Below, in pieces: positions 43-52,991 of a DNA stretch of 64,000 bases. A model generated the notes under the pieces. The model saw only the letters and a program-made list of their open reading frames with translations, was not told the origin of the DNA and did no database searches. The position numbers and the translations under genes were made by a program. The DNA lies in the IMG/VR virus record IMGVR_UViG_3300028384_001500, positions 1 to 64,000 of that record. One strand, 5' to 3'. How positions within the stretch are numbered: position 1 is the stretch's first letter; each line of letters starts with the position of its first letter.

Positions 43-71
43 ATAATACCGCATGTTTTCCAGTATTACAT
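43..71 (-). promoter_or_regulatory. Class I promoter-like motif ATGTAA-N17-TATTAT
   Basis: Minus strand reads ATGTAA, exactly 17 nt, TATTAT, preceded by an A-tract; the same spacing recurs at six other intergenic sites. Confidence 0.55.
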
Positions 72-78
72 TTTTTAT

Positions 79-1356: not shown

Positions 1357-1368
1357 TTAAATAAAAAA

Positions 1369-1440
1369 GATGTGATCGAGATCTTTCCTAACATCTCATA
1401 AAATAAAAGTGGGGACGAGGAGCGTATGCTCGATCACATC
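1369..1440. repeat. 12-bp perfect inverted repeat enclosing 48 nt
   Basis: gatgtgatcgag (1369-1380) and ctcgatcacatc (1429-1440), between tRNA genes. Confidence 0.7.
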
Positions 1441-1449
1441 AGAAAAAGC

Positions 1450-1552
1450 TGCGAGACTAGGGAGTCGAACCCTAAAAAGCCTAAGATAAATTGCAAACTC
1501 TATCTCAGCCCAGTTGATCCGATTTGTTTTACACCAAACTCAACTGTCTCGC
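1450..1552 (-). ncRNA. tRNA-like RNA with canonical acceptor/T-arm and two long non-canonical hairpins
   Basis: Acceptor GCGAGAC/GTCTCGC plus A discriminator; T-arm TAGGG-TTCGACT-CCCTA; D and anticodon arms replaced by AGTTGA..TCAACT and GGGCTGAGATAGA..TTTATCTTAGGCTT hairpins. Confidence 0.7.
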
Positions 1553-1557
1553 ATAAA

Positions 1558-1635
1558 TGGACGCGGGAGCCGGATTCGAACCGACGACCTCTGGGTTATG
1601 AGCCCAGCAAGCTGACCTGACTGCTCCATCCCGCA
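1558..1635 (-). tRNA. trnfM: Initiator tRNA-fMet(CAU)
   Basis: Loop CTCATAA, three G-C pairs in the anticodon stem (CTGGG/CCCAG), A11:U24, weak U1.G72 pair, encoded CCA; unusual U73 discriminator. Confidence 0.9.
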
Positions 1636-1645
1636 ATAAAAAGAA

Positions 1646-1930
1646 TGTATCATGAGGGACTCGAACCCCCGACCCGCTGCTTAGCGCACCACTACAATTT
1701 TCATTGCCAATTTTCATTGTTTGTAGTCCGGACTATCCCTCAACCATAGAATTAATTATTCCTTAGGCCACTCCCGTCTAGTCTCTACACCTTCATAATT
1801 TCTTATGCTTGGCTCGGGATTGCCATTTTAAAGGTTTCCCCGAATTTGAGAGTGTATGCAATGTGATGTTTCCACCACAAGGCTCCTTTATCTTAAAGGC
1901 AGCTGCTCTATCCATCTGAGCTAATGATAC
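1646..1930 (-). tRNA. trnR: tRNA-Arg(UCU), intron-containing (exons 1896-1930 and 1646-1684)
   Basis: Joined exons give acceptor GTATCAT/ATGATAC, stem GCTGC/GCAGC, loop CTT+CTAA = CUUCUAA, and A20 (Arg identity element). Confidence 0.88.
1685..1895 (-). mobile_element. Group I intron, IC3/trnL-like, 211 nt, no ORF
   Basis: GAGCCTT..GGAAAC start, CAAATTCGGGGAAACC, GGCAATCCCGAGCCAA, GGTGTAGAGACTA, GATAGTCC; P3 CACTCTC/GGGAGTG, P4 TCGGG/CCCGA, P7 GACTA/TAGTC; terminal G; P1 exon CUU paired with GAG. Confidence 0.88.
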
Positions 1931-1970
1931 ATATAATTTATAGCAATTTTAAAGATCTTGTTATAAGAAT

Positions 1971-1999
1971 ATTATAACTAACATTTTTTAGTATTACAT
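1971..1999 (-). promoter_or_regulatory. Class I promoter-like motif ATGTAA-N17-TATAAT upstream of tRNA-Arg
   Basis: Exact 17-nt spacer, A-tract upstream, about 40 nt before the tRNA 5' end. Confidence 0.65.
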
Positions 2000-2017
2000 T
2001 TTTTTATTTTATAATAA

Positions 2018-2108
2018 CAAGGGCGTGAGTCTCTAGCATATCATTAGATGATTACTAGCACACATGGGAACTCATCGTTTAAGATTGCCTGCCTGAGCAA
2101 TCCCCTCG
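2018..2108 (-). ncRNA. Candidate structured RNA downstream of tRNA-Leu
   Basis: Closing stem CGAGGG/CCCTTG, hairpin GATTGC/GCAATC, stem TGAGT/ACTCA enclosing CTAG/CTAG and ATCAT/ATGAT. Confidence 0.35.
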
Positions 2109-4406: not shown

Positions 4407-4435
4407 AGTATACCAGGATGAAAATAGAATTACAC
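4407..4435 (-). promoter_or_regulatory. Class I promoter-like motif GTGTAA-N17-TATACT
   Basis: Exact 17-nt spacer, about 30 nt upstream of the 4376 start. Confidence 0.65.
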
Positions 4436-4437
4436 TT

Positions 4438-5016
4438 TTAGCTTTTAATTGTATTACTAATAATGTGGTAGAAGACTTGCCTGCAATCTTCGACGTCTTT
4501 ACCTGCTGTATGTGCACCTTCTGAATCGATTTCTAAGTGTTCACGAAGTGTGTCTAAATTTTGTCGATCTGTTGGTAAGAATAGATATGAAAGAGCGCAT
4601 GTATCAATTTTTGGATATCCAAAACTGTATGTCTTATCAGACTCTTTTGCATCTCTCGTCCACTTCTTATAGCCGTATCTCTGGAATACTGCTGTTAAAT
4701 GATCTAGATCAAAGTCAATGTTATGTGCAATAATAGGACCAAAGCGAAGCTTCTTAGCAATAGTTTCAGCAACTTCTTCAAATGTAGGAGCATCTTCCCA
4801 ATCAGCTTCGTTGTAGCCGCAAATCTTAAGTGCTTCTTCGGATGCGAACTCTAGTTCTACCGGGCGAGGCTTAATCTTTGTAGTCCACTTATCTGTGTTG
4901 CCACTTTCCCAGTCAGTAATAATAGATATCTCTAAAATTGCAGACCTGGAAGAGTCTAAGTGTGTTGTTTCGATATCAAAAAATGTTGTTGCTTTTGCGT
5001 TTGTAAAGTTTCCCAT
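4438..5016 (-). CDS. DEDDh 3'-5' exonuclease (DnaQ/epsilon-like)
   Basis: ExoI FFDIETT, ExoII HNIDFD, ExoIII HTAGKDVED; start at MGNFT after AGGAG. Confidence 0.85.
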   Translation of the reverse strand: MGNFTNAKATTFFDIETTHLDSSRSAILEISIITDWESGNTDKWTTKIKPRPVELEFASEEALKICGYNEADWEDAPTFEEVAETIAKKLRFGPIIAHNIDFDLDHLTAVFQRYGYKKWTRDAKESDKTYSFGYPKIDTCALSYLFLPTDRQNLDTLREHLEIDSEGAHTAGKDVEDCRQVFYHIISNTIKS

Positions 5017-21780: not shown

Positions 21781-22830
21781 TTACTTAATTCTTTTATAAT
21801 TTGATTTAAACCAATCTTTAAGAATATCTCGATCATCGATGCCTCTTCCTTCATTAAGAGTATTATCTTTTTCTATTTCATTTAGCCGATCGTTTTTTCT
21901 TTTTTGCCTTCTCAATTCAGATATTGTATTTTGAATTAGCGATGCTTCTTTCCTATATTGCTTTCCTTCTTTTTTTCTGGAGTTGTAAGAGCTTTTAATG
22001 TATTGTAACTCATCTATCATTTCTTGTAAGTAACGAGAATAGTCTGAGCTTCCTTTTTCTGCTCTTTTAATTTCATTTAAAGTAGGCATAGAAAGAATTT
22101 GAAAAACTGAGTGTTTTGTATTTTCGTCCATCCAACTAGGCAATCCTGACTTAAATGCCTCGACGTCACCCGTTTCTAAATACGCCCTCATTTTAGTACC
22201 GCTAATATCTATTGTTCCACCTTCTCCACCGCGAGTAAATCTATCTGGAAAATCGGCTCCCATAAAAGAAACTCCAGCTGGATTCATTGACCTAAGCGCA
22301 TCTGAGTATTTAGGTGGCGAAGATTTAAGTTCAACTGCCGGATCTTTCTTAGAAAACTTAGGCAACAAATAATACTGTTGTGTATCCTCAGGGTCTGAAT
22401 AGATGTAAAACATGTTGTTTGGTCGCGTACCAGTGTGCGCTAATTCGTTTGCTTCTTTTAGTAACGCAAGAACTTTACCAACAGGTCCTCCGCCGTATTC
22501 AATATGAATATTAGGAGAAACACTTTCGTAGTAGTCTTCAATATATGCAGTCCAGACTTGTTGCATTGATTCACCTTTAAGTGCACCTCTATCTCCAAGT
22601 CCTATAAAAAGAAGCACTCTACCATTCGGATCTTGTGCAGCATCGTTTATGGCGTGCATAATCATCTGGTCATGGCCGGCGTGGAAAGGTTTAGTACCAC
22701 CAGCAAAAATGTAATAGTTTTCACCAGGAACAACTTGAAAACCTTCATCTCGATAACCGACATACACTCCTCTCGCCATTTCATTAAGACTACCATACAT
22801 TATTTCGTATATGTTTGTTTTTCTTTTCAT
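21781..22830 (-). CDS. HxGH nucleotidylyltransferase (cytidylyltransferase-like)
   Basis: FAGGTKPFHAGH and ISGTKMR motifs; N-terminus ends in LNE. Confidence 0.75.
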   Translation of the reverse strand: MKRKTNIYEIMYGSLNEMARGVYVGYRDEGFQVVPGENYYIFAGGTKPFHAGHDQMIMHAINDAAQDPNGRVLLFIGLGDRGALKGESMQQVWTAYIEDYYESVSPNIHIEYGGGPVGKVLALLKEANELAHTGTRPNNMFYIYSDPEDTQQYYLLPKFSKKDPAVELKSSPPKYSDALRSMNPAGVSFMGADFPDRFTRGGEGGTIDISGTKMRAYLETGDVEAFKSGLPSWMDENTKHSVFQILSMPTLNEIKRAEKGSSDYSRYLQEMIDELQYIKSSYNSRKKEGKQYRKEASLIQNTISELRRQKRKNDRLNEIEKDNTLNEGRGIDDRDILKDWFKSNYKRIK

Positions 22831-36660: not shown

Positions 36661-36680
36661 CCACTAAGTTTCCAAAAAAG

Positions 36681-37040
36681 TGGACCGCAGCAGAATCGAA
36701 CTGCTGTCCGCAATAGTCTTGGTTCTAGTCATTCACAAGCTTAGTTATCTTTTTTCTCCTGATAACAGGGATAGTCACCTCTTTCCACCAACTCTAGGTA
36801 ACATTGAGTTCCCACCTCATACTACGAGGATAACCATTTTAGTCATGATATATCGCCTCGACTAACTGGCTAACCTCTTGTTTTTCACCGGAAGAGATAC
36901 CGGCGTTGATTAAGCAGCTAAAGCTACTGACTCAAAGTGTGCGTTATTGTTTGCAACTAAATTGTTTGAACTGTTAAGGTCGAGTCTCACCTGCTTGCAC
37001 TGTCTCCTTGATTCTATTCCGTCGAAGCCATTAGCGGCCC
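36681..37040 (-). ncRNA. ssrA: tmRNA, 360 nt; tag (A)ANNNAHFESVALAA encoded at 36910-36954
   Basis: 5' GGGCCGC..GGCTTCGAC; 3' AGCAG-TTCGATT-CTGCT-GCGGTCC-A; G3.U70 alanine determinant; tag ORF ends ALAA-stop. Confidence 0.93.
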
Positions 37041-37156: not shown

Positions 37157-38428
37157 TTACTTATCAAATGAAGTGTAAGATGGGTCAAGTGAATCTACGC
37201 TGACGTCGCTAAGTACTTCACTTATTCTAATATTGCTAATGTTTGTTTCAAATTGATGTGCTGCCAAGCCCACATCTAAATTCATGTCTTTACCGCCAAT
37301 ATCAAGTGCAACTAATTCACCGTCAGCTCTTCTTCCAAATTGTTCCTCATGAATATCACGCCATGTTAATGGGTCAATATTTTTTTCAGGATCGCCTGAC
37401 TTAAGTATGATTTCATCAATTAAGTTTAAGATATCTAAGTAGTCCTCGTATAAAAGACTGTTTTTGTTCATTGGCAGTTTCTTTCTTTGTCTTATTCTTT
37501 GGTTTTTTAAATGATCAATAAAAATTTGATTAAACTGATGAACTTCAGGAAAATTATTAACTATACCTAATACATTTAAAAATAACATTTTTAGTGTAAG
37601 AGGACTTCCGTTGGTTGTTTTAACTAAAGCCTCACCTGTTTCTTTACCGTGTGTAGAAAATAAATTATTGACTTCACTAGCAATTCTTCTTACATGTTTA
37701 GGAGGTGTGTTAGGATTGCTAATGTAATTTATAAGTTGTTGAAACGTACTAAGATTATATTTTTTTAAAAATCTTAAACCACTGTAACCCGCTTTAAGTA
37801 TATCTTGATAAACAGCTTCAATCTGATTTGCAATTGTATTTCCTAAACTATATAACGCAATTATATCATTAAATTTAGTAAACCTTATTTGTATAAATTT
37901 TGCTAATTCAATGTCTATATTTTTAAAAACAAATCGATCAGGAATAATTCTTTCCATTATTATGTAGTAAAGTCTATTTATTTGATAGTTTTTATTGCTT
38001 TTGTTGTGAGTCGACCCACGCTTCCAATATACAACCGGTTGATCCAAGTTAATAACACCTTTTGAATAAACTTTTGCAGTTTTTTCATGACTATTGGAAA
38101 CAAAACCTAGGTTTTTAGCAGAGTTGTCAATTGAATGAAATAACTTAATAACTTTAAAATCGTCTAGTGAAACAACAATACCTTCTGCACCGCTAGCAAC
38201 AATCCTAGGCATGTGCATCCGATTCTCAAAGCGAGGAAGTCTTTCTATGTCAGCTAGGTAATCAACAATTTTTTCTGCTAAAGGCGCATTAAGTGACCAA
38301 CCTTTATCGTGTGAAGGATCACTAGCAGCACTAGCGTCGTATAAATAAAAATTCTCACTAAGCAAATTTAACCTTTTACTTATTGATTCGCGTATTAATC
38401 CCCTTATTATGTTTTTTAAATTAGCCAA
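37157..38428 (-). CDS. Leader-bearing protein-kinase-like protein
   Basis: ASGAEGIV Gly-loop, VIK, YIIMERI hinge, WRDIHEEQ catalytic-loop-like, ALDIG; long insertion between the lobes. Confidence 0.6.
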   Translation of the reverse strand: MANLKNIIRGLIRESISKRLNLLSENFYLYDASAASDPSHDKGWSLNAPLAEKIVDYLADIERLPRFENRMHMPRIVASGAEGIVVSLDDFKVIKLFHSIDNSAKNLGFVSNSHEKTAKVYSKGVINLDQPVVYWKRGSTHNKSNKNYQINRLYYIIMERIIPDRFVFKNIDIELAKFIQIRFTKFNDIIALYSLGNTIANQIEAVYQDILKAGYSGLRFLKKYNLSTFQQLINYISNPNTPPKHVRRIASEVNNLFSTHGKETGEALVKTTNGSPLTLKMLFLNVLGIVNNFPEVHQFNQIFIDHLKNQRIRQRKKLPMNKNSLLYEDYLDILNLIDEIILKSGDPEKNIDPLTWRDIHEEQFGRRADGELVALDIGGKDMNLDVGLAAHQFETNISNIRISEVLSDVSVDSLDPSYTSFDK

Positions 38429-52577: not shown

Positions 52578-52991
52578 TTAGTTAATAGTAATTTTTTTAG
52601 CTGCCGGTTTTTTACTTTCATATGTAGGTACAAGAATAGAAAGCACGCCTGATGTATAATCAGCATCGACGTTATCAATATCGACATTTTTAGGCAAAGA
52701 AAAAGATCGTTTAAATTTTGTTGTCTGAATATGCTCTTGATGAATATATTCTTTTCCTTCAAAATCTAACGTACCTTTAACTGTTAAAATATTATTTTCG
52801 ATGTTAATATCGAAGTTGTCACGTGAAAAGCCGGGTAAAAATAAATCAAAGACGTAAGAATTGTCTTGTTTGTAAATATTACATTTTGTATTGAAACTGT
52901 TAGCATGCGACTGCTTACCGCGGCTTTTTCCAATTCCAAAGTAATCATCATTAAAAAAATCATTTAAATAAGAATTATAAATTAGACTCAT
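52578..52991 (-). CDS. Hsp20/alpha-crystallin small heat-shock protein
   Basis: LPGF..DINIENNILTVKG, FKRSFSLP, ADYTSGVLSI. Confidence 0.9.
   Translation of the reverse strand: MSLIYNSYLNDFFNDDYFGIGKSRGKQSHANSFNTKCNIYKQDNSYVFDLFLPGFSRDNFDINIENNILTVKGTLDFEGKEYIHQEHIQTTKFKRSFSLPKNVDIDNVDADYTSGVLSILVPTYESKKPAAKKITIN

What the first reader, a model, noticed from the sequence alone, without database searches (positions are those of the whole stretch)
1450..1552. 103-nt tRNA mimic: perfect acceptor/T half, rebuilt D and anticodon arms
The 7-bp acceptor stem is fully Watson-Crick and the T-arm canonical (TTCGACT), giving the 12-bp helix that RNase P and CCA-adding enzyme recognise. The D-arm is replaced by an 11-bp interrupted hairpin, and the anticodon arm by a roughly 13-bp hairpin with an 8-nt GUUUGCAA loop. 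Intact pairing throughout argues against simple decay. Inference: a decoy for anticodon nucleases or uncharged-tRNA sensors, or a new tRNA-like ncRNA class. It is not circularly permuted, unlike bacterial Y RNA.
Basis: partly seen in the sequence, partly recalled or inferred. Interest (0 to 1): 0.68.

Follow-up and report, generated by a model that had tools for sequence, protein, structure and literature searches.

The report
Phage tRNA-like RNA with kissing arms
A marine giant phage carries, inside its tRNA gene cluster, a conserved 103-base RNA that keeps the "handle" of a tRNA but replaces the decoding parts with two long arms whose tips pair with each other. It has the same build as the T4 phage "species 1 RNA", whose function has been unknown for 50 years.

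Summary
Window 1450-1552 (minus strand) folds into a four-arm cloverleaf: a 7-bp Watson-Crick acceptor stem, discriminator A, a canonical T arm, and two roughly 13-layer arms (-40.3 kcal/mol, z = -5.3). ARAGORN and Rfam do not call it a tRNA.

It is a real gene, not decay. I found ten near variants and one diverged homologue (X', 98 nt) at the same site in marine metagenome contigs. The element is 93-96% identical where flanking coding DNA is 76-84%. Twelve base pairs show compensatory double changes (0 of 500 shuffles).

The two 8-nt loops are complementary over 6 nt, and this pairing covaries. A third lineage (X'', 105 nt) lies between ORFs in a related phage. It has the same architecture, with loops UUGCCG/CGGCAA. 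T4 rnaC has UUGACG/CGUCAA.

The "anticodon" loop is therefore a pairing partner, not an anticodon mimic.

Best reading: a non-decoding tRNA-like stable RNA, cut out by tRNA-processing enzymes, with the same architecture as T4 species 1 RNA. Its function is only inferred; I favour a tRNA-end mimic or decoy, or possibly a processing element. It is a new variant of a known but unexplained kind.

The parts
1450..1552 (-). X: 103-nt tRNA-like RNA gene (whole element)
   Evidence: The fold has z = -5.3. There are 11 distinct homologues with 12 compensatory pairs. The R2 covariance model scores it 122 bits.
1546..1552 (-). Acceptor stem, 5' strand (X1-7, GCGAGAC)
   Evidence: It forms 7 Watson-Crick pairs with X96-102. 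In X', three pairs change on both sides: CG>UA, AU>GC, CG>UA.
1512..1545 (-). Arm 1 (X8-41), in place of the D arm. It has a 6-bp proximal helix, an asymmetric internal loop with a conserved GG, a distal 4-5-bp helix and an 8-nt loop.
   Evidence: The proximal helix has 3 compensatory pairs. The GG-containing 3' internal loop recurs in X' and X''.
1528..1533 (-). Loop-1 nucleotides X20-25 (UGUAAA), proposed to pair with loop 2
   Evidence: Covariation is seen at 22-59 (U.G, C-G, U-A) and at 23-58 (A-U to G-C in X'). Loop shuffles give p about 0.01-0.03 per lineage.
1478..1511 (-). Arm 2 (X42-75), in place of the anticodon arm. It has 2 + 10 bp around a purine-purine mismatch and an 8-nt loop GUUUGCAA.
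   Evidence: Four pairs show double changes. The sequence varies while the structure is kept.
1492..1497 (-). Loop-2 nucleotides X56-61 (UUUGCA), partner of loop 1
1458..1474 (-). T arm (X79-95): UAGGG-UUCGACU-CCCUA, preceded by the UUU linker (window 1475-1477)
   Evidence: It is invariant except loop position 59.
1450..1457 (-). Acceptor stem, 3' strand (X96-102) and discriminator A (window 1450). No CCA is encoded, and the trailer is U-rich.
1558..1635 (-). Initiator-like tRNA-Met with encoded CCA, lying 5 nt (UUUAU) upstream of X in every X- or X'-bearing contig
1363..1440 (-). Hairpin H: a 12-bp stem, a conserved CU-rich loop of about 48 nt, and a U-run. It lies directly downstream of X in all X/X' loci.
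   Evidence: The stem covaries in L003:7364-7436, where no X is present.
1990..2003 (-). Promoter-like phage motif AAAAATGTAATACT upstream of the unit tRNA-Arg / tRNA-Met / X / H
   Evidence: There are 8 copies in the window against 1.7 expected. Two lie in the tRNA cluster and two upstream of the tmRNA.

Best explanation
X is a gene for a small, stable, non-decoding tRNA-like RNA.

Shown:
- It is a conserved structured RNA with a four-way junction.
- The acceptor stem and T arm are those of a tRNA.
- The D and anticodon arms are replaced by two arms of equal length, about 12-13 layers each.
- Their 8-nt loops are complementary over 6 nt and covary.

Inferred from context and established tRNA biology:
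- X is co-transcribed with tRNA-Arg and tRNA-Met from a phage promoter.
- Its 5' end is cut by RNase P. U is at position -1, and G1 starts a 12-bp acceptor/T helix, which is the minimal RNase P substrate.
- Its 3' end is trimmed after A73, and host enzymes add CCA, as for the cluster's CCA-less tRNAs.
- The loop-loop contact, within one molecule or between molecules, locks the body in a shape that cannot be used on the ribosome.

Inferred function, low certainty: a trans-acting mimic of a tRNA 3' end/minihelix that occupies or recruits a factor reading tRNA ends. That factor could be a processing enzyme, a synthetase, or a defence enzyme that modifies tRNA CCA ends.

It has the same architecture as T4 species 1 RNA (rnaC).

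The confidence of 0.6 is for structure, non-decoding status and tRNA-type processing. I put the decoy step alone at about 0.25.
For: Structure: z = -5.3. All variants fold to the same cloverleaf.

Conservation: there are 11 distinct homologues at the same site. The block tRNA-Met + X + H is 94-96% identical, against 76-84% for flanking coding DNA.

Covariation: 96.9% of cells are paired, 12 pairs show double changes, 0 of 500 shuffles reach this, and slid controls give 0-3.

Loop-loop pairing:
- 22-59 occurs as U.G, C-G and U-A, while C/A is never seen. 23-58 changes from A-U to G-C in X'.
- There is a 6-nt complement in X, X' and X'', with p about 0.01-0.03 each.
- X'' has UUGCCG/CGGCAA.
- T4 rnaC has UUGACG/CGUCAA, invariant in 5 diverged T4-like phages while the stems covary.

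Not a tRNA. Loop 2 varies G/A at the would-be anticodon.

Processing context:
- X is on the same strand as the tRNAs, 5 nt after the CCA of tRNA-Met.
- U is at -1, A at 73, the trailer is U-rich, and these features hold in all three lineages.
- RNase P is known to process non-tRNA substrates (PMC11143913).
- T4 RNAC is a real stable RNA detected by Northern blot (PMC9697503).
Against: - No RNA data exist. No RNA run holds this phage, so expression, ends, CCA addition and stability are all inferred.
- Most double changes come from one diverged lineage (X'). Among the near variants alone, covariation is weak: 82 of 500 shuffles, and 8 of 9 stem transitions keep pairing, p about 0.09 by my own count.
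- X is absent from many close relatives (L003; 34 IMG/VR records). It is replaced by an ORF in L154. So it is dispensable.
- A trans-acting partner is not identified. No Ro, RtcB or CCA-adding enzyme gene is in the record.
- In T4-like rnaC the two arms are very unequal, about 27 versus 10 bp. An intramolecular kiss is therefore not obviously possible there.
- Sequence homology between X and T4 rnaC is not detectable.
Confidence: 0.6

Rival explanations
1. X is a cis-acting processing or stability element ('punctuation'). Its only job would be to be recognised and cut by RNase P and the 3' tRNA nucleases. That would define the ends of neighbouring RNAs (hairpin H, or mRNAs) or block exonucleases. 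The excised RNA itself would have no function.
For: - X'' sits 8 nt after the stop codon of a 97-aa ORF and before the next ORF. It is outside any tRNA cluster and is conserved there in more than 20 contigs.
- X and X' always lie directly upstream of hairpin H.
- Precedents recalled from the literature: mascRNA/MALAT1, plant mitochondrial t-elements (PMC1920247 title), and MHV68 tRNA-miRNA units.
Against: - In the tRNA cluster a true tRNA with its own processing sites lies 5 nt upstream.
- In L003, H follows tRNA-Arg directly without X.
- RNase P needs only the acceptor/T minihelix. This idea does not explain the two arms, their matched length, the conserved GG internal loop or the covarying loop-loop complement.
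- T4 RNAC accumulates as a stable RNA (PMC9697503).
Confidence: 0.22
2. X is a self-associating scaffold. The complementary loops would pair between molecules, 'hand in hand' as in phi29 pRNA, to give dimers, rings or filaments that display tRNA-like minihelices.
For: - The loops are complementary in all four lineages.
- In T4-like rnaC the arms are too unequal (27 versus 10 bp) for an easy intramolecular contact.
- If arm 1 and arm 2 stack coaxially, as the D and anticodon arms do in tRNA, their loops point in opposite directions.
Against: - In X, X' and X'' the two arms have matched lengths and shorten together in X'. That fits side-by-side arms closed within one molecule.
- There are no oligomerisation data.
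- The predicted kissing energy is modest, -2.4 to -7.6 kcal/mol.
Confidence: 0.1
3. X is an anticodon-nuclease decoy. Arm 2 would present an anticodon-loop look-alike that soaks up a host tRNA-cleaving defence enzyme.
For: - Phage tRNA clusters are known counter-measures to tRNA-targeting defences (general knowledge).
- X lies in such a cluster, next to tRNA-Lys(UUU), tRNA-Arg(UCU) and tRNA-Leu(UAA).
- Its patchy distribution fits an arms-race gene.
Against: - The loop has 8 nt, not 7, and lacks the U33-purine37 frame.
- It changes between lineages and even within the X clade (G59A).
- It is engaged in a covarying pairing with loop 1.
- The stem is 8 bp longer than an anticodon stem.
Confidence: 0.04
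4. X is a functional but aberrant decoding tRNA, for example Leu-type, a suppressor, or a quadruplet reader with an 8-nt loop.
For: - The acceptor stem GCGAGA-/-UCUCGC with A73 is of the phage tRNA-Leu type. T4 tRNA-Leu is the best tRNA match to model R1, at 22.6 bits.
- G18 and G19 fall at canonical numbering.
Against: - It is not called by ARAGORN or the Rfam tRNA model.
- The anticodon arm has 13 layers, and there is no 7-nt loop.
- The would-be anticodon varies: UUG or UUA, or GCA or ACA.
- The X' and X'' loops differ altogether.
Confidence: 0.02
5. X is a decaying tRNA pseudogene, or a chance fold produced by palindromic insertions.
For: - The acceptor/T half looks like a tRNA-Leu remnant.
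- tRNA clusters in this phage group are highly plastic.
Against: - X is 93-96% conserved against 76-84% for flanking coding DNA.
- There are 12 compensatory pairs.
- Six G-U pairs make the fold strand-specific.
- The same architecture recurs in X', X'' and T4 rnaC.
Confidence: 0.02

Closest known systems
Bacteriophage T4 species 1 RNA (rnaC) and its homologues in Tevenvirinae
   Same: - It is phage-encoded, on the tRNA strand, at the distal end of the tRNA operon.
- Its 5' and 3' ends pair into a 7-layer acceptor-like stem that abuts a canonical T arm (CCGGG-UUCGAAU-CCCGG).
- Two long hairpins replace the D and anticodon arms.
- The two hairpin tips are complementary 6-mers: UUGACG/CGUCAA in T4, UUGCCG/CGGCAA in X'', UGYAAA/UUURCA in X.
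- It has no Rfam family and gives the same weak sub-threshold tRNA-Sec hit: 17.5 bits against 16.0 for X.
- Its function is unknown (PMC3014915, PMC9697503).
   Different: - No detectable sequence homology to X.
- T4 rnaC is 139 nt with very unequal arms (about 27 and 10 bp), and its acceptor-like stem has tandem U.U mismatches.
- X has 103 nt, equal arms, a perfect acceptor stem and discriminator A.
- The hosts and phage lineage are unrelated. The marine phage has no cultured relative; the best protein match is 37%.
Virus-encoded tRNA-like RNAs processed by tRNA enzymes (murid herpesvirus 68 vtRNAs/TMERs; mascRNA of MALAT1; plant mitochondrial t-elements). Recalled from the literature, not tested here.
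   Same: A tRNA-shaped module is used to borrow RNase P/RNase Z processing and CCA addition. It is not aminoacylated or used in decoding. It is often followed by another hairpin RNA, as X is followed by H, or is embedded between genes, as X'' is.
   Different: Those are eukaryotic systems with near-normal cloverleaves. None is known to have matched long arms with a loop-loop contact.
Bacterial Y RNA YrlA (the tRNA-like module of the Ro/Rsr RNP)
   Same: It mimics a tRNA with a T arm and acceptor-like stem, has a long extra helix, and does not decode.
   Different: - YrlA is circularly permuted relative to tRNA and works with Rsr (TROVE).
- X is not permuted.
- No TROVE or RtcB gene is in the 236-kb record.
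phi29 packaging RNA (pRNA). Recalled from the literature.
   Same: It is a phage RNA with paired 5'/3' ends and two loops of complementary sequence that covary.
   Different: pRNA has a three-way junction and no tRNA-like T arm. Its loops pair between molecules to form a ring on the portal. Nothing links X to packaging.
tRNA-like domain of tmRNA
   Same: It has an acceptor stem plus a T arm, with a reduced D region and a long helix in place of the anticodon arm.
   Different: tmRNA has G3.U70, a reading frame and pseudoknots. X has G3-C70 and none of these. The phage has a separate, ordinary tmRNA at window 36680-37040.

Membership tests
Canonical tRNA (Rfam RF00005) | Detected by tRNA covariance or heuristic models | tested here: not met
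   ARAGORN makes no call, with or without introns. RF00005 gives no match at E up to 10.
Canonical tRNA (Rfam RF00005) | 7-bp acceptor stem stacked on a 5-bp T stem with a T-loop UUCRANY | tested here: met
   GCGAGAC/GUCUCGC and UAGGG-UUCGACU-CCCUA
Canonical tRNA (Rfam RF00005) | 3-4-bp D stem with an 8-11-nt loop, and a 5-bp anticodon stem with a 7-nt loop carrying a conserved anticodon | tested here: not met
   Both arms have 12-13 layers and the loops have 8 nt. The would-be anticodon varies and pairs with the other loop.
tRNA-Sec (RF01852) | Score at or above the gathering threshold, a UCA anticodon and a long variable arm | tested here: not met
   16.0 bits against 47. There is no UCA and no variable arm.
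Y RNA / YrlA-Rsr system | Permuted tRNA-like module and a linked Ro (TROVE) gene | tested here: not met
   X is not permuted. PF05731 and PF01139 are absent from G000, while the controls ring. The record is only about 77% complete.
T4 species 1 RNA (rnaC)-like tRNA-like RNAs | Phage gene on the tRNA/gene strand, with paired termini abutting a canonical T arm | tested here: met
T4 species 1 RNA (rnaC)-like tRNA-like RNAs | Two long hairpins in place of the D and anticodon arms | tested here: met
T4 species 1 RNA (rnaC)-like tRNA-like RNAs | Complementary 6-mers at the tips of the two hairpins | tested here: met
   Seen in X, X' and X'' and in T4 and four other Tevenvirinae.
T4 species 1 RNA (rnaC)-like tRNA-like RNAs | Detectable sequence or profile homology to T4 rnaC | tested here: not met
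   Model R1 hits T4 tRNA-Leu and tRNA-Gln but not rnaC in L044. Only the loops of X'' resemble those of T4, differing by one covarying pair.
T4 species 1 RNA (rnaC)-like tRNA-like RNAs | Accumulates as a discrete stable RNA processed from the tRNA operon | not testable with these tools
   No RNA run holds this phage. This is shown for T4 only (PMC9697503).
tmRNA (RF00023) | G3.U70, a tag reading frame and pseudoknots | tested here: not met
   X has G3-C70 and no Rfam hit. A separate tmRNA lies at 36680-37040.

The most novel reading that the evidence does not exclude
X, X', X'' and T4 species 1 RNA form one widespread class of phage RNAs. In this class a tRNA acceptor/T minihelix is mounted on a body closed, or multimerised, by a kissing-loop contact. 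The class would act as a non-decodable tRNA 3'-end decoy against host defences that attack tRNA ends or tRNA-processing enzymes. Alternatively, it would self-assemble into higher-order RNA scaffolds. Either reading would give T4 RNA C a testable function after 50 years.
Probability: 0.15. Interest if true: 0.85.

Novelty: new variant of a known kind. Interest (0 to 1): 0.64.

Why it matters
Phage tRNA clusters are now seen as weapons in the conflict over the host translation apparatus. The non-tRNA RNAs within them, such as T4 RNA C and D, have had no function since the 1970s.

This finding shows that a tRNA-like RNA of the same build exists in an unrelated, uncultured marine jumbo-phage lineage. 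It is under purifying selection, and it shares a feature not reported in the papers I could search: complementary, covarying loops at the tips of the two remodelled arms.

That gives concrete, cheap experiments in T4, namely loop mutants and compensatory mutants. It also provides a covariance model to look for the class elsewhere, and a new four-way-junction RNA architecture for structural study.

Tried and rejected
- Cultured-phage DNA searches (INPHARED, near and distant) returned only generic tRNA matches and chance hits.
- IMG/VR exact or degenerate patterns for X returned nothing or chance hits in coding DNA: and (L045, L046; checked).
- The single-sequence model R1 and the family model R2, run over 34 whole related IMG/VR records, hit only ordinary tRNAs plus X''.
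- The GTDB genome scan gave one chance hit, L119. The metagenome hit L118 is also unrelated, and neither has an Rfam family.
- My acceptor + T-arm descriptor scan of relatives' tRNA clusters found no further X-like genes.
- L100:6482-6603 looked X-like to the model but is a normal tRNA-Gly preceded by a hairpin.
- Sequencing runs: only DNA contigs with small shares, and no RNA run. Read laying showed that near relatives carry tRNA-Met + X, but it did not list the variable positions.
- Partner genes: no CCA-adding enzyme, TROVE or RtcB gene was found.
- Neighbouring proteins are DNA-metabolism genes or lack a Pfam match (RadA/KaiC-like, RNase T-like, DNA ligase). They give no clue.
- X does not pair with hairpin H; a joint fold keeps the two separate.
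- Literature searches found no description of X-like RNAs or of loop-loop pairing in T4 RNA C. Old subscription papers are not in the library.
- Not tried: complex prediction and the protein fold tools, which do not apply to an RNA.

Full report
WHAT IS THERE.

The window is the first 64 kb of a 236,652-bp IMG/VR virus record. The phage is an uncultured marine jumbo phage with no close cultured relative. DNA searches find only generic tRNA matches. The best protein matches are about 30-37% identical.

On the minus strand lies a tRNA cluster, in this order:
- a RadA/KaiC-like gene (3292-2537)
- a 76-aa ORF
- tRNA-Leu(UAA) (2204-2120)
- tRNA-Arg(UCU), split by a 211-nt group I intron (1931-1645)
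- an initiator-like tRNA-Met with encoded CCA (1635-1558)
- a 5-nt spacer, UUUAU
- the element X (1552-1450)
- a long hairpin H with a U-run (1440-1363)
- tRNA-Lys(UUU) (1356-1283)

A repeated promoter-like motif, AAAAATGTAATNYT, occurs 8 times in the window against 1.7 expected. It lies upstream of tRNA-Leu, of tRNA-Arg and of the tmRNA gene.

It has a 7-bp Watson-Crick acceptor stem, discriminator A, the T arm UAGGG-UUCGACU-CCCUA, and two long arms.
- The MFE is -40.3 kcal/mol and equals the centroid. z = -5.3, and 0 of 200 shuffles fold as well.
- The complementary strand folds far worse: -23.1 kcal/mol, z = -2.4. Six G-U pairs account for this.
- ARAGORN does not call it, with or without the intron option. 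The Rfam tRNA model does not match. tRNA-Sec reaches 16 bits, through the acceptor/T half only.

IT IS A CONSERVED GENE.

Nothing similar was found in cultured phages, in IMG/VR, or in 34 whole related IMG/VR records.

A degenerate acceptor + T-arm pattern found eight 103-nt homologues in marine metagenome contigs. Following the neighbouring 76-aa ORF through the protein collection gave more. Together these come to ten near variants of 103-104 nt.

That search also found a strongly diverged 98-nt homologue, X' (L153:3065-3162, also in L156 and L157). It lies at exactly the same site: after the CCA of tRNA-Met plus UUUAU, and before H.

Synteny is kept: tRNA-Leu, tRNA-Arg (intronless in relatives), tRNA-Met, X, H, then another tRNA.

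The block tRNA-Met + X + H is 94-96% identical to the window, where flanking coding DNA is only 76-84%. X therefore evolves as slowly as the true tRNA beside it.

X is also accessory. L003 lacks it, and L154, which has the same ORF76 protein as L153, has an ORF in its place.

COVARIATION.

Among the near variants alone the signal is weak:
- one double change
- 82 of 500 shuffles reach the observed value
- 8 of 9 stem transitions keep pairing, p about 0.09 by my count

With X' included (alignment A5) the signal is strong:
- 96.9% of cells pair.
- 12 pairs show changes on both sides: 3 in the acceptor stem, 3 in proximal arm 1, 4 in arm 2 and 2 in the loop-loop helix.
- 0 of 500 shuffles reach any measure, and slid controls give 0-3 such pairs.

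The caveat is that most doubles come from one lineage.

X' also favours a nearly isoenergetic alternative for the distal part of arm 1. In X this is G14.U31 plus 15-18/27-30, at -39.5 versus -40.3 kcal/mol. It leaves an 8-nt loop and a 3' internal loop with a conserved GG.

A LOOP-LOOP CONTACT.

The only two loop substitutions among the near variants are at X22 and X59. Their observed combinations are U.G, C-G and U-A, and never C/A.

In X' the neighbouring pair changes from A-U to G-C, and 21-60 changes from G-C to G.U.

In X and X' the two 8-nt loops can form six contiguous antiparallel pairs: UGYAAA with UUURCA, and UGCGAA with UUCGUA. Composition-preserving shuffles give p about 0.01-0.03 for each.

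The 'anticodon loop' is thus a pairing partner, not an anticodon mimic. This speaks against the anticodon-nuclease decoy idea and against decoding.

A THIRD LINEAGE AND THE T4 CONNECTION.

The family model R2 picked out one further non-tRNA, X'' (L008:10938-11042, 105 nt), in a related phage. ARAGORN does not call it. It has the same plan:
- a 7-layer acceptor stem with one U.U
- A73 and a canonical T arm
- two arms of about 13 layers each
- GG in the 3' internal loop of arm 1
- a perfect 6-nt complement between the arm tips, UUGCCG/CGGCAA

X'' is not in a tRNA cluster. It sits 8 nt after the stop codon of a 97-aa ORF and before the next ORF. It is conserved there in more than 20 contigs, with structure-preserving changes.

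T4 species 1 RNA (rnaC), annotated at the end of the T4 tRNA operon, folds the same way:
- an interrupted 7-layer terminal stem
- a canonical T arm
- two hairpins, with tips UUGACG and CGUCAA

These tips are the X'' motif with the middle pair changed on both sides (C-G versus A-U).

In five diverged Tevenvirinae the stems of rnaC covary, with 19 compensatory pairs. Both 6-mers stay invariant and complementary.

rnaC has no Rfam family and gives the same weak tRNA-Sec hit as X. Its function is still described as unknown (PMC3014915, PMC9697503).

I found no paper describing the loop complementarity, but old subscription papers are not in the library.

HOW IT MOST LIKELY WORKS.

Shown: a conserved four-way-junction RNA with a tRNA acceptor/T half and two remodelled arms with complementary, covarying loops.

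Inferred:
- X is co-transcribed with the tRNAs.
- RNase P cuts its 5' end. U is at -1 and a 12-bp acceptor/T helix follows, in all three lineages.
- Its 3' end is trimmed after A73, and CCA is added as for the CCA-less tRNAs of the same cluster.
- The arms are too long, and the loops too occupied, for decoding.

The function is not established. I favour a trans-acting mimic of a tRNA end (about 0.25). The patchy distribution and the location fit an arms-race gene. The rivals are:
- a pure processing or punctuation element (0.22), supported by the intercistronic X'' and by X-H adjacency
- a self-associating scaffold (0.10)

Whether the kiss is intramolecular or intermolecular is open. Matched arms in X, X' and X'' suggest intramolecular. 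The unequal arms of T4 rnaC suggest intermolecular.

The acceptor/T half is of the phage tRNA-Leu type. X may descend from a tRNA-Leu gene and could conceivably still be seen by LeuRS. This is inference only.

VERDICT.

X is a new variant of a known but unexplained kind: rnaC-like phage tRNA-like RNAs. No homology to T4 rnaC is demonstrable for X itself. The shared architecture and the loop-loop feature are the new points.

Noticed in passing
window 1645-1931 (-): tRNA-Arg(UCU) is interrupted in the anticodon loop by a 211-nt group I intron (ARAGORN intron mode; Rfam Intron_gpI 55 bits). The same tRNA-Arg has no intron in all X-bearing relatives (e.g. L110:2756-2830).
   Followed up: partly
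window 1363-1440 (-); L003:7364-7436: Hairpin H has a 12-bp stem, a conserved CU-rich loop of about 48 nt (…CGCUCCUCGUCCCC…) and a U-run (z = -4.9). It is almost identical in all X and X' loci. In L003 it follows tRNA-Arg without X, with a fully covarying stem and the same loop. It may be a terminator or a small regulatory RNA with an anti-Shine-Dalgarno-like motif.
   Followed up: partly
window ~2010-2108 (-); L003:7448-7545: A second conserved structured element of about 100 nt lies between tRNA genes. It has a closing stem GAGGGG…/…CGCCCUUG and a motif CUUAAACGAUG. It has no Rfam match.
   Followed up: partly
window 36680-37040 (-): The phage encodes a one-piece tmRNA (tag ANNNAHFESVALAA; Rfam 79 bits). 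Two copies of the promoter-like motif lie upstream, at 37579-37592 and 37751-37764.
   Followed up: no
window 62-75, 1990-2003, 2275-2288, 4426-4439, 22705-22718, 37579-37592, 37751-37764, 52875-52888: A repeated motif AAAAATGTAATNYT occurs 8 times against 1.7 expected, mostly upstream of RNA genes. It is probably a phage promoter element.
   Followed up: partly
L008:10938-11042 (+) and L179-L193: X'' is a tRNA-like element of the same architecture, placed between two small ORFs rather than in a tRNA cluster, in an abundant marine phage population.
   Followed up: yes
L044:1909-2047 (-), L194-L197: The two hairpin tips of T4 rnaC (UUGACG / CGUCAA) are complementary and invariant across Tequatro-, Kanagawa-, Moon- and Karamvirus, while the stems covary. 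Enterobacter phage IME523 (L194) has a degenerate T-loop (UGCAUGC).
   Followed up: partly
L098:114-229, L056:1999-2120, L071:8651-8749 (-), L093:11199-11312: Unrelated IMG/VR phages carry 99-122-nt elements with a Leu-type acceptor stem (GCGAG…CUCGCA) and a canonical T arm. Long hairpins replace the D and anticodon arms. ARAGORN does not call them, and only L071 has tRNA genes anywhere in its locus (the nearest about 290 nt away).
   Followed up: partly
L078, L104, L107, L109 (98-99 nt); L100:7014-7126; L041:6737-6853, L043:5769-5862: These are class II-like phage tRNA genes with a normal D arm and 15-45 extra nucleotides in or near the anticodon loop. ARAGORN reads these as 'introns'. An example is a 32-nt hairpin in a tRNA-Leu(UAA) of a 257-kb phage.
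   Followed up: no
L113:1655-2005 / L130, L131; L129:3225-3848: Different relatives have an Endonuclease VII-like ORF, or a RAP-domain ORF, inserted between tRNA-Leu and tRNA-Arg. This shows how plastic the cluster is.
   Followed up: no
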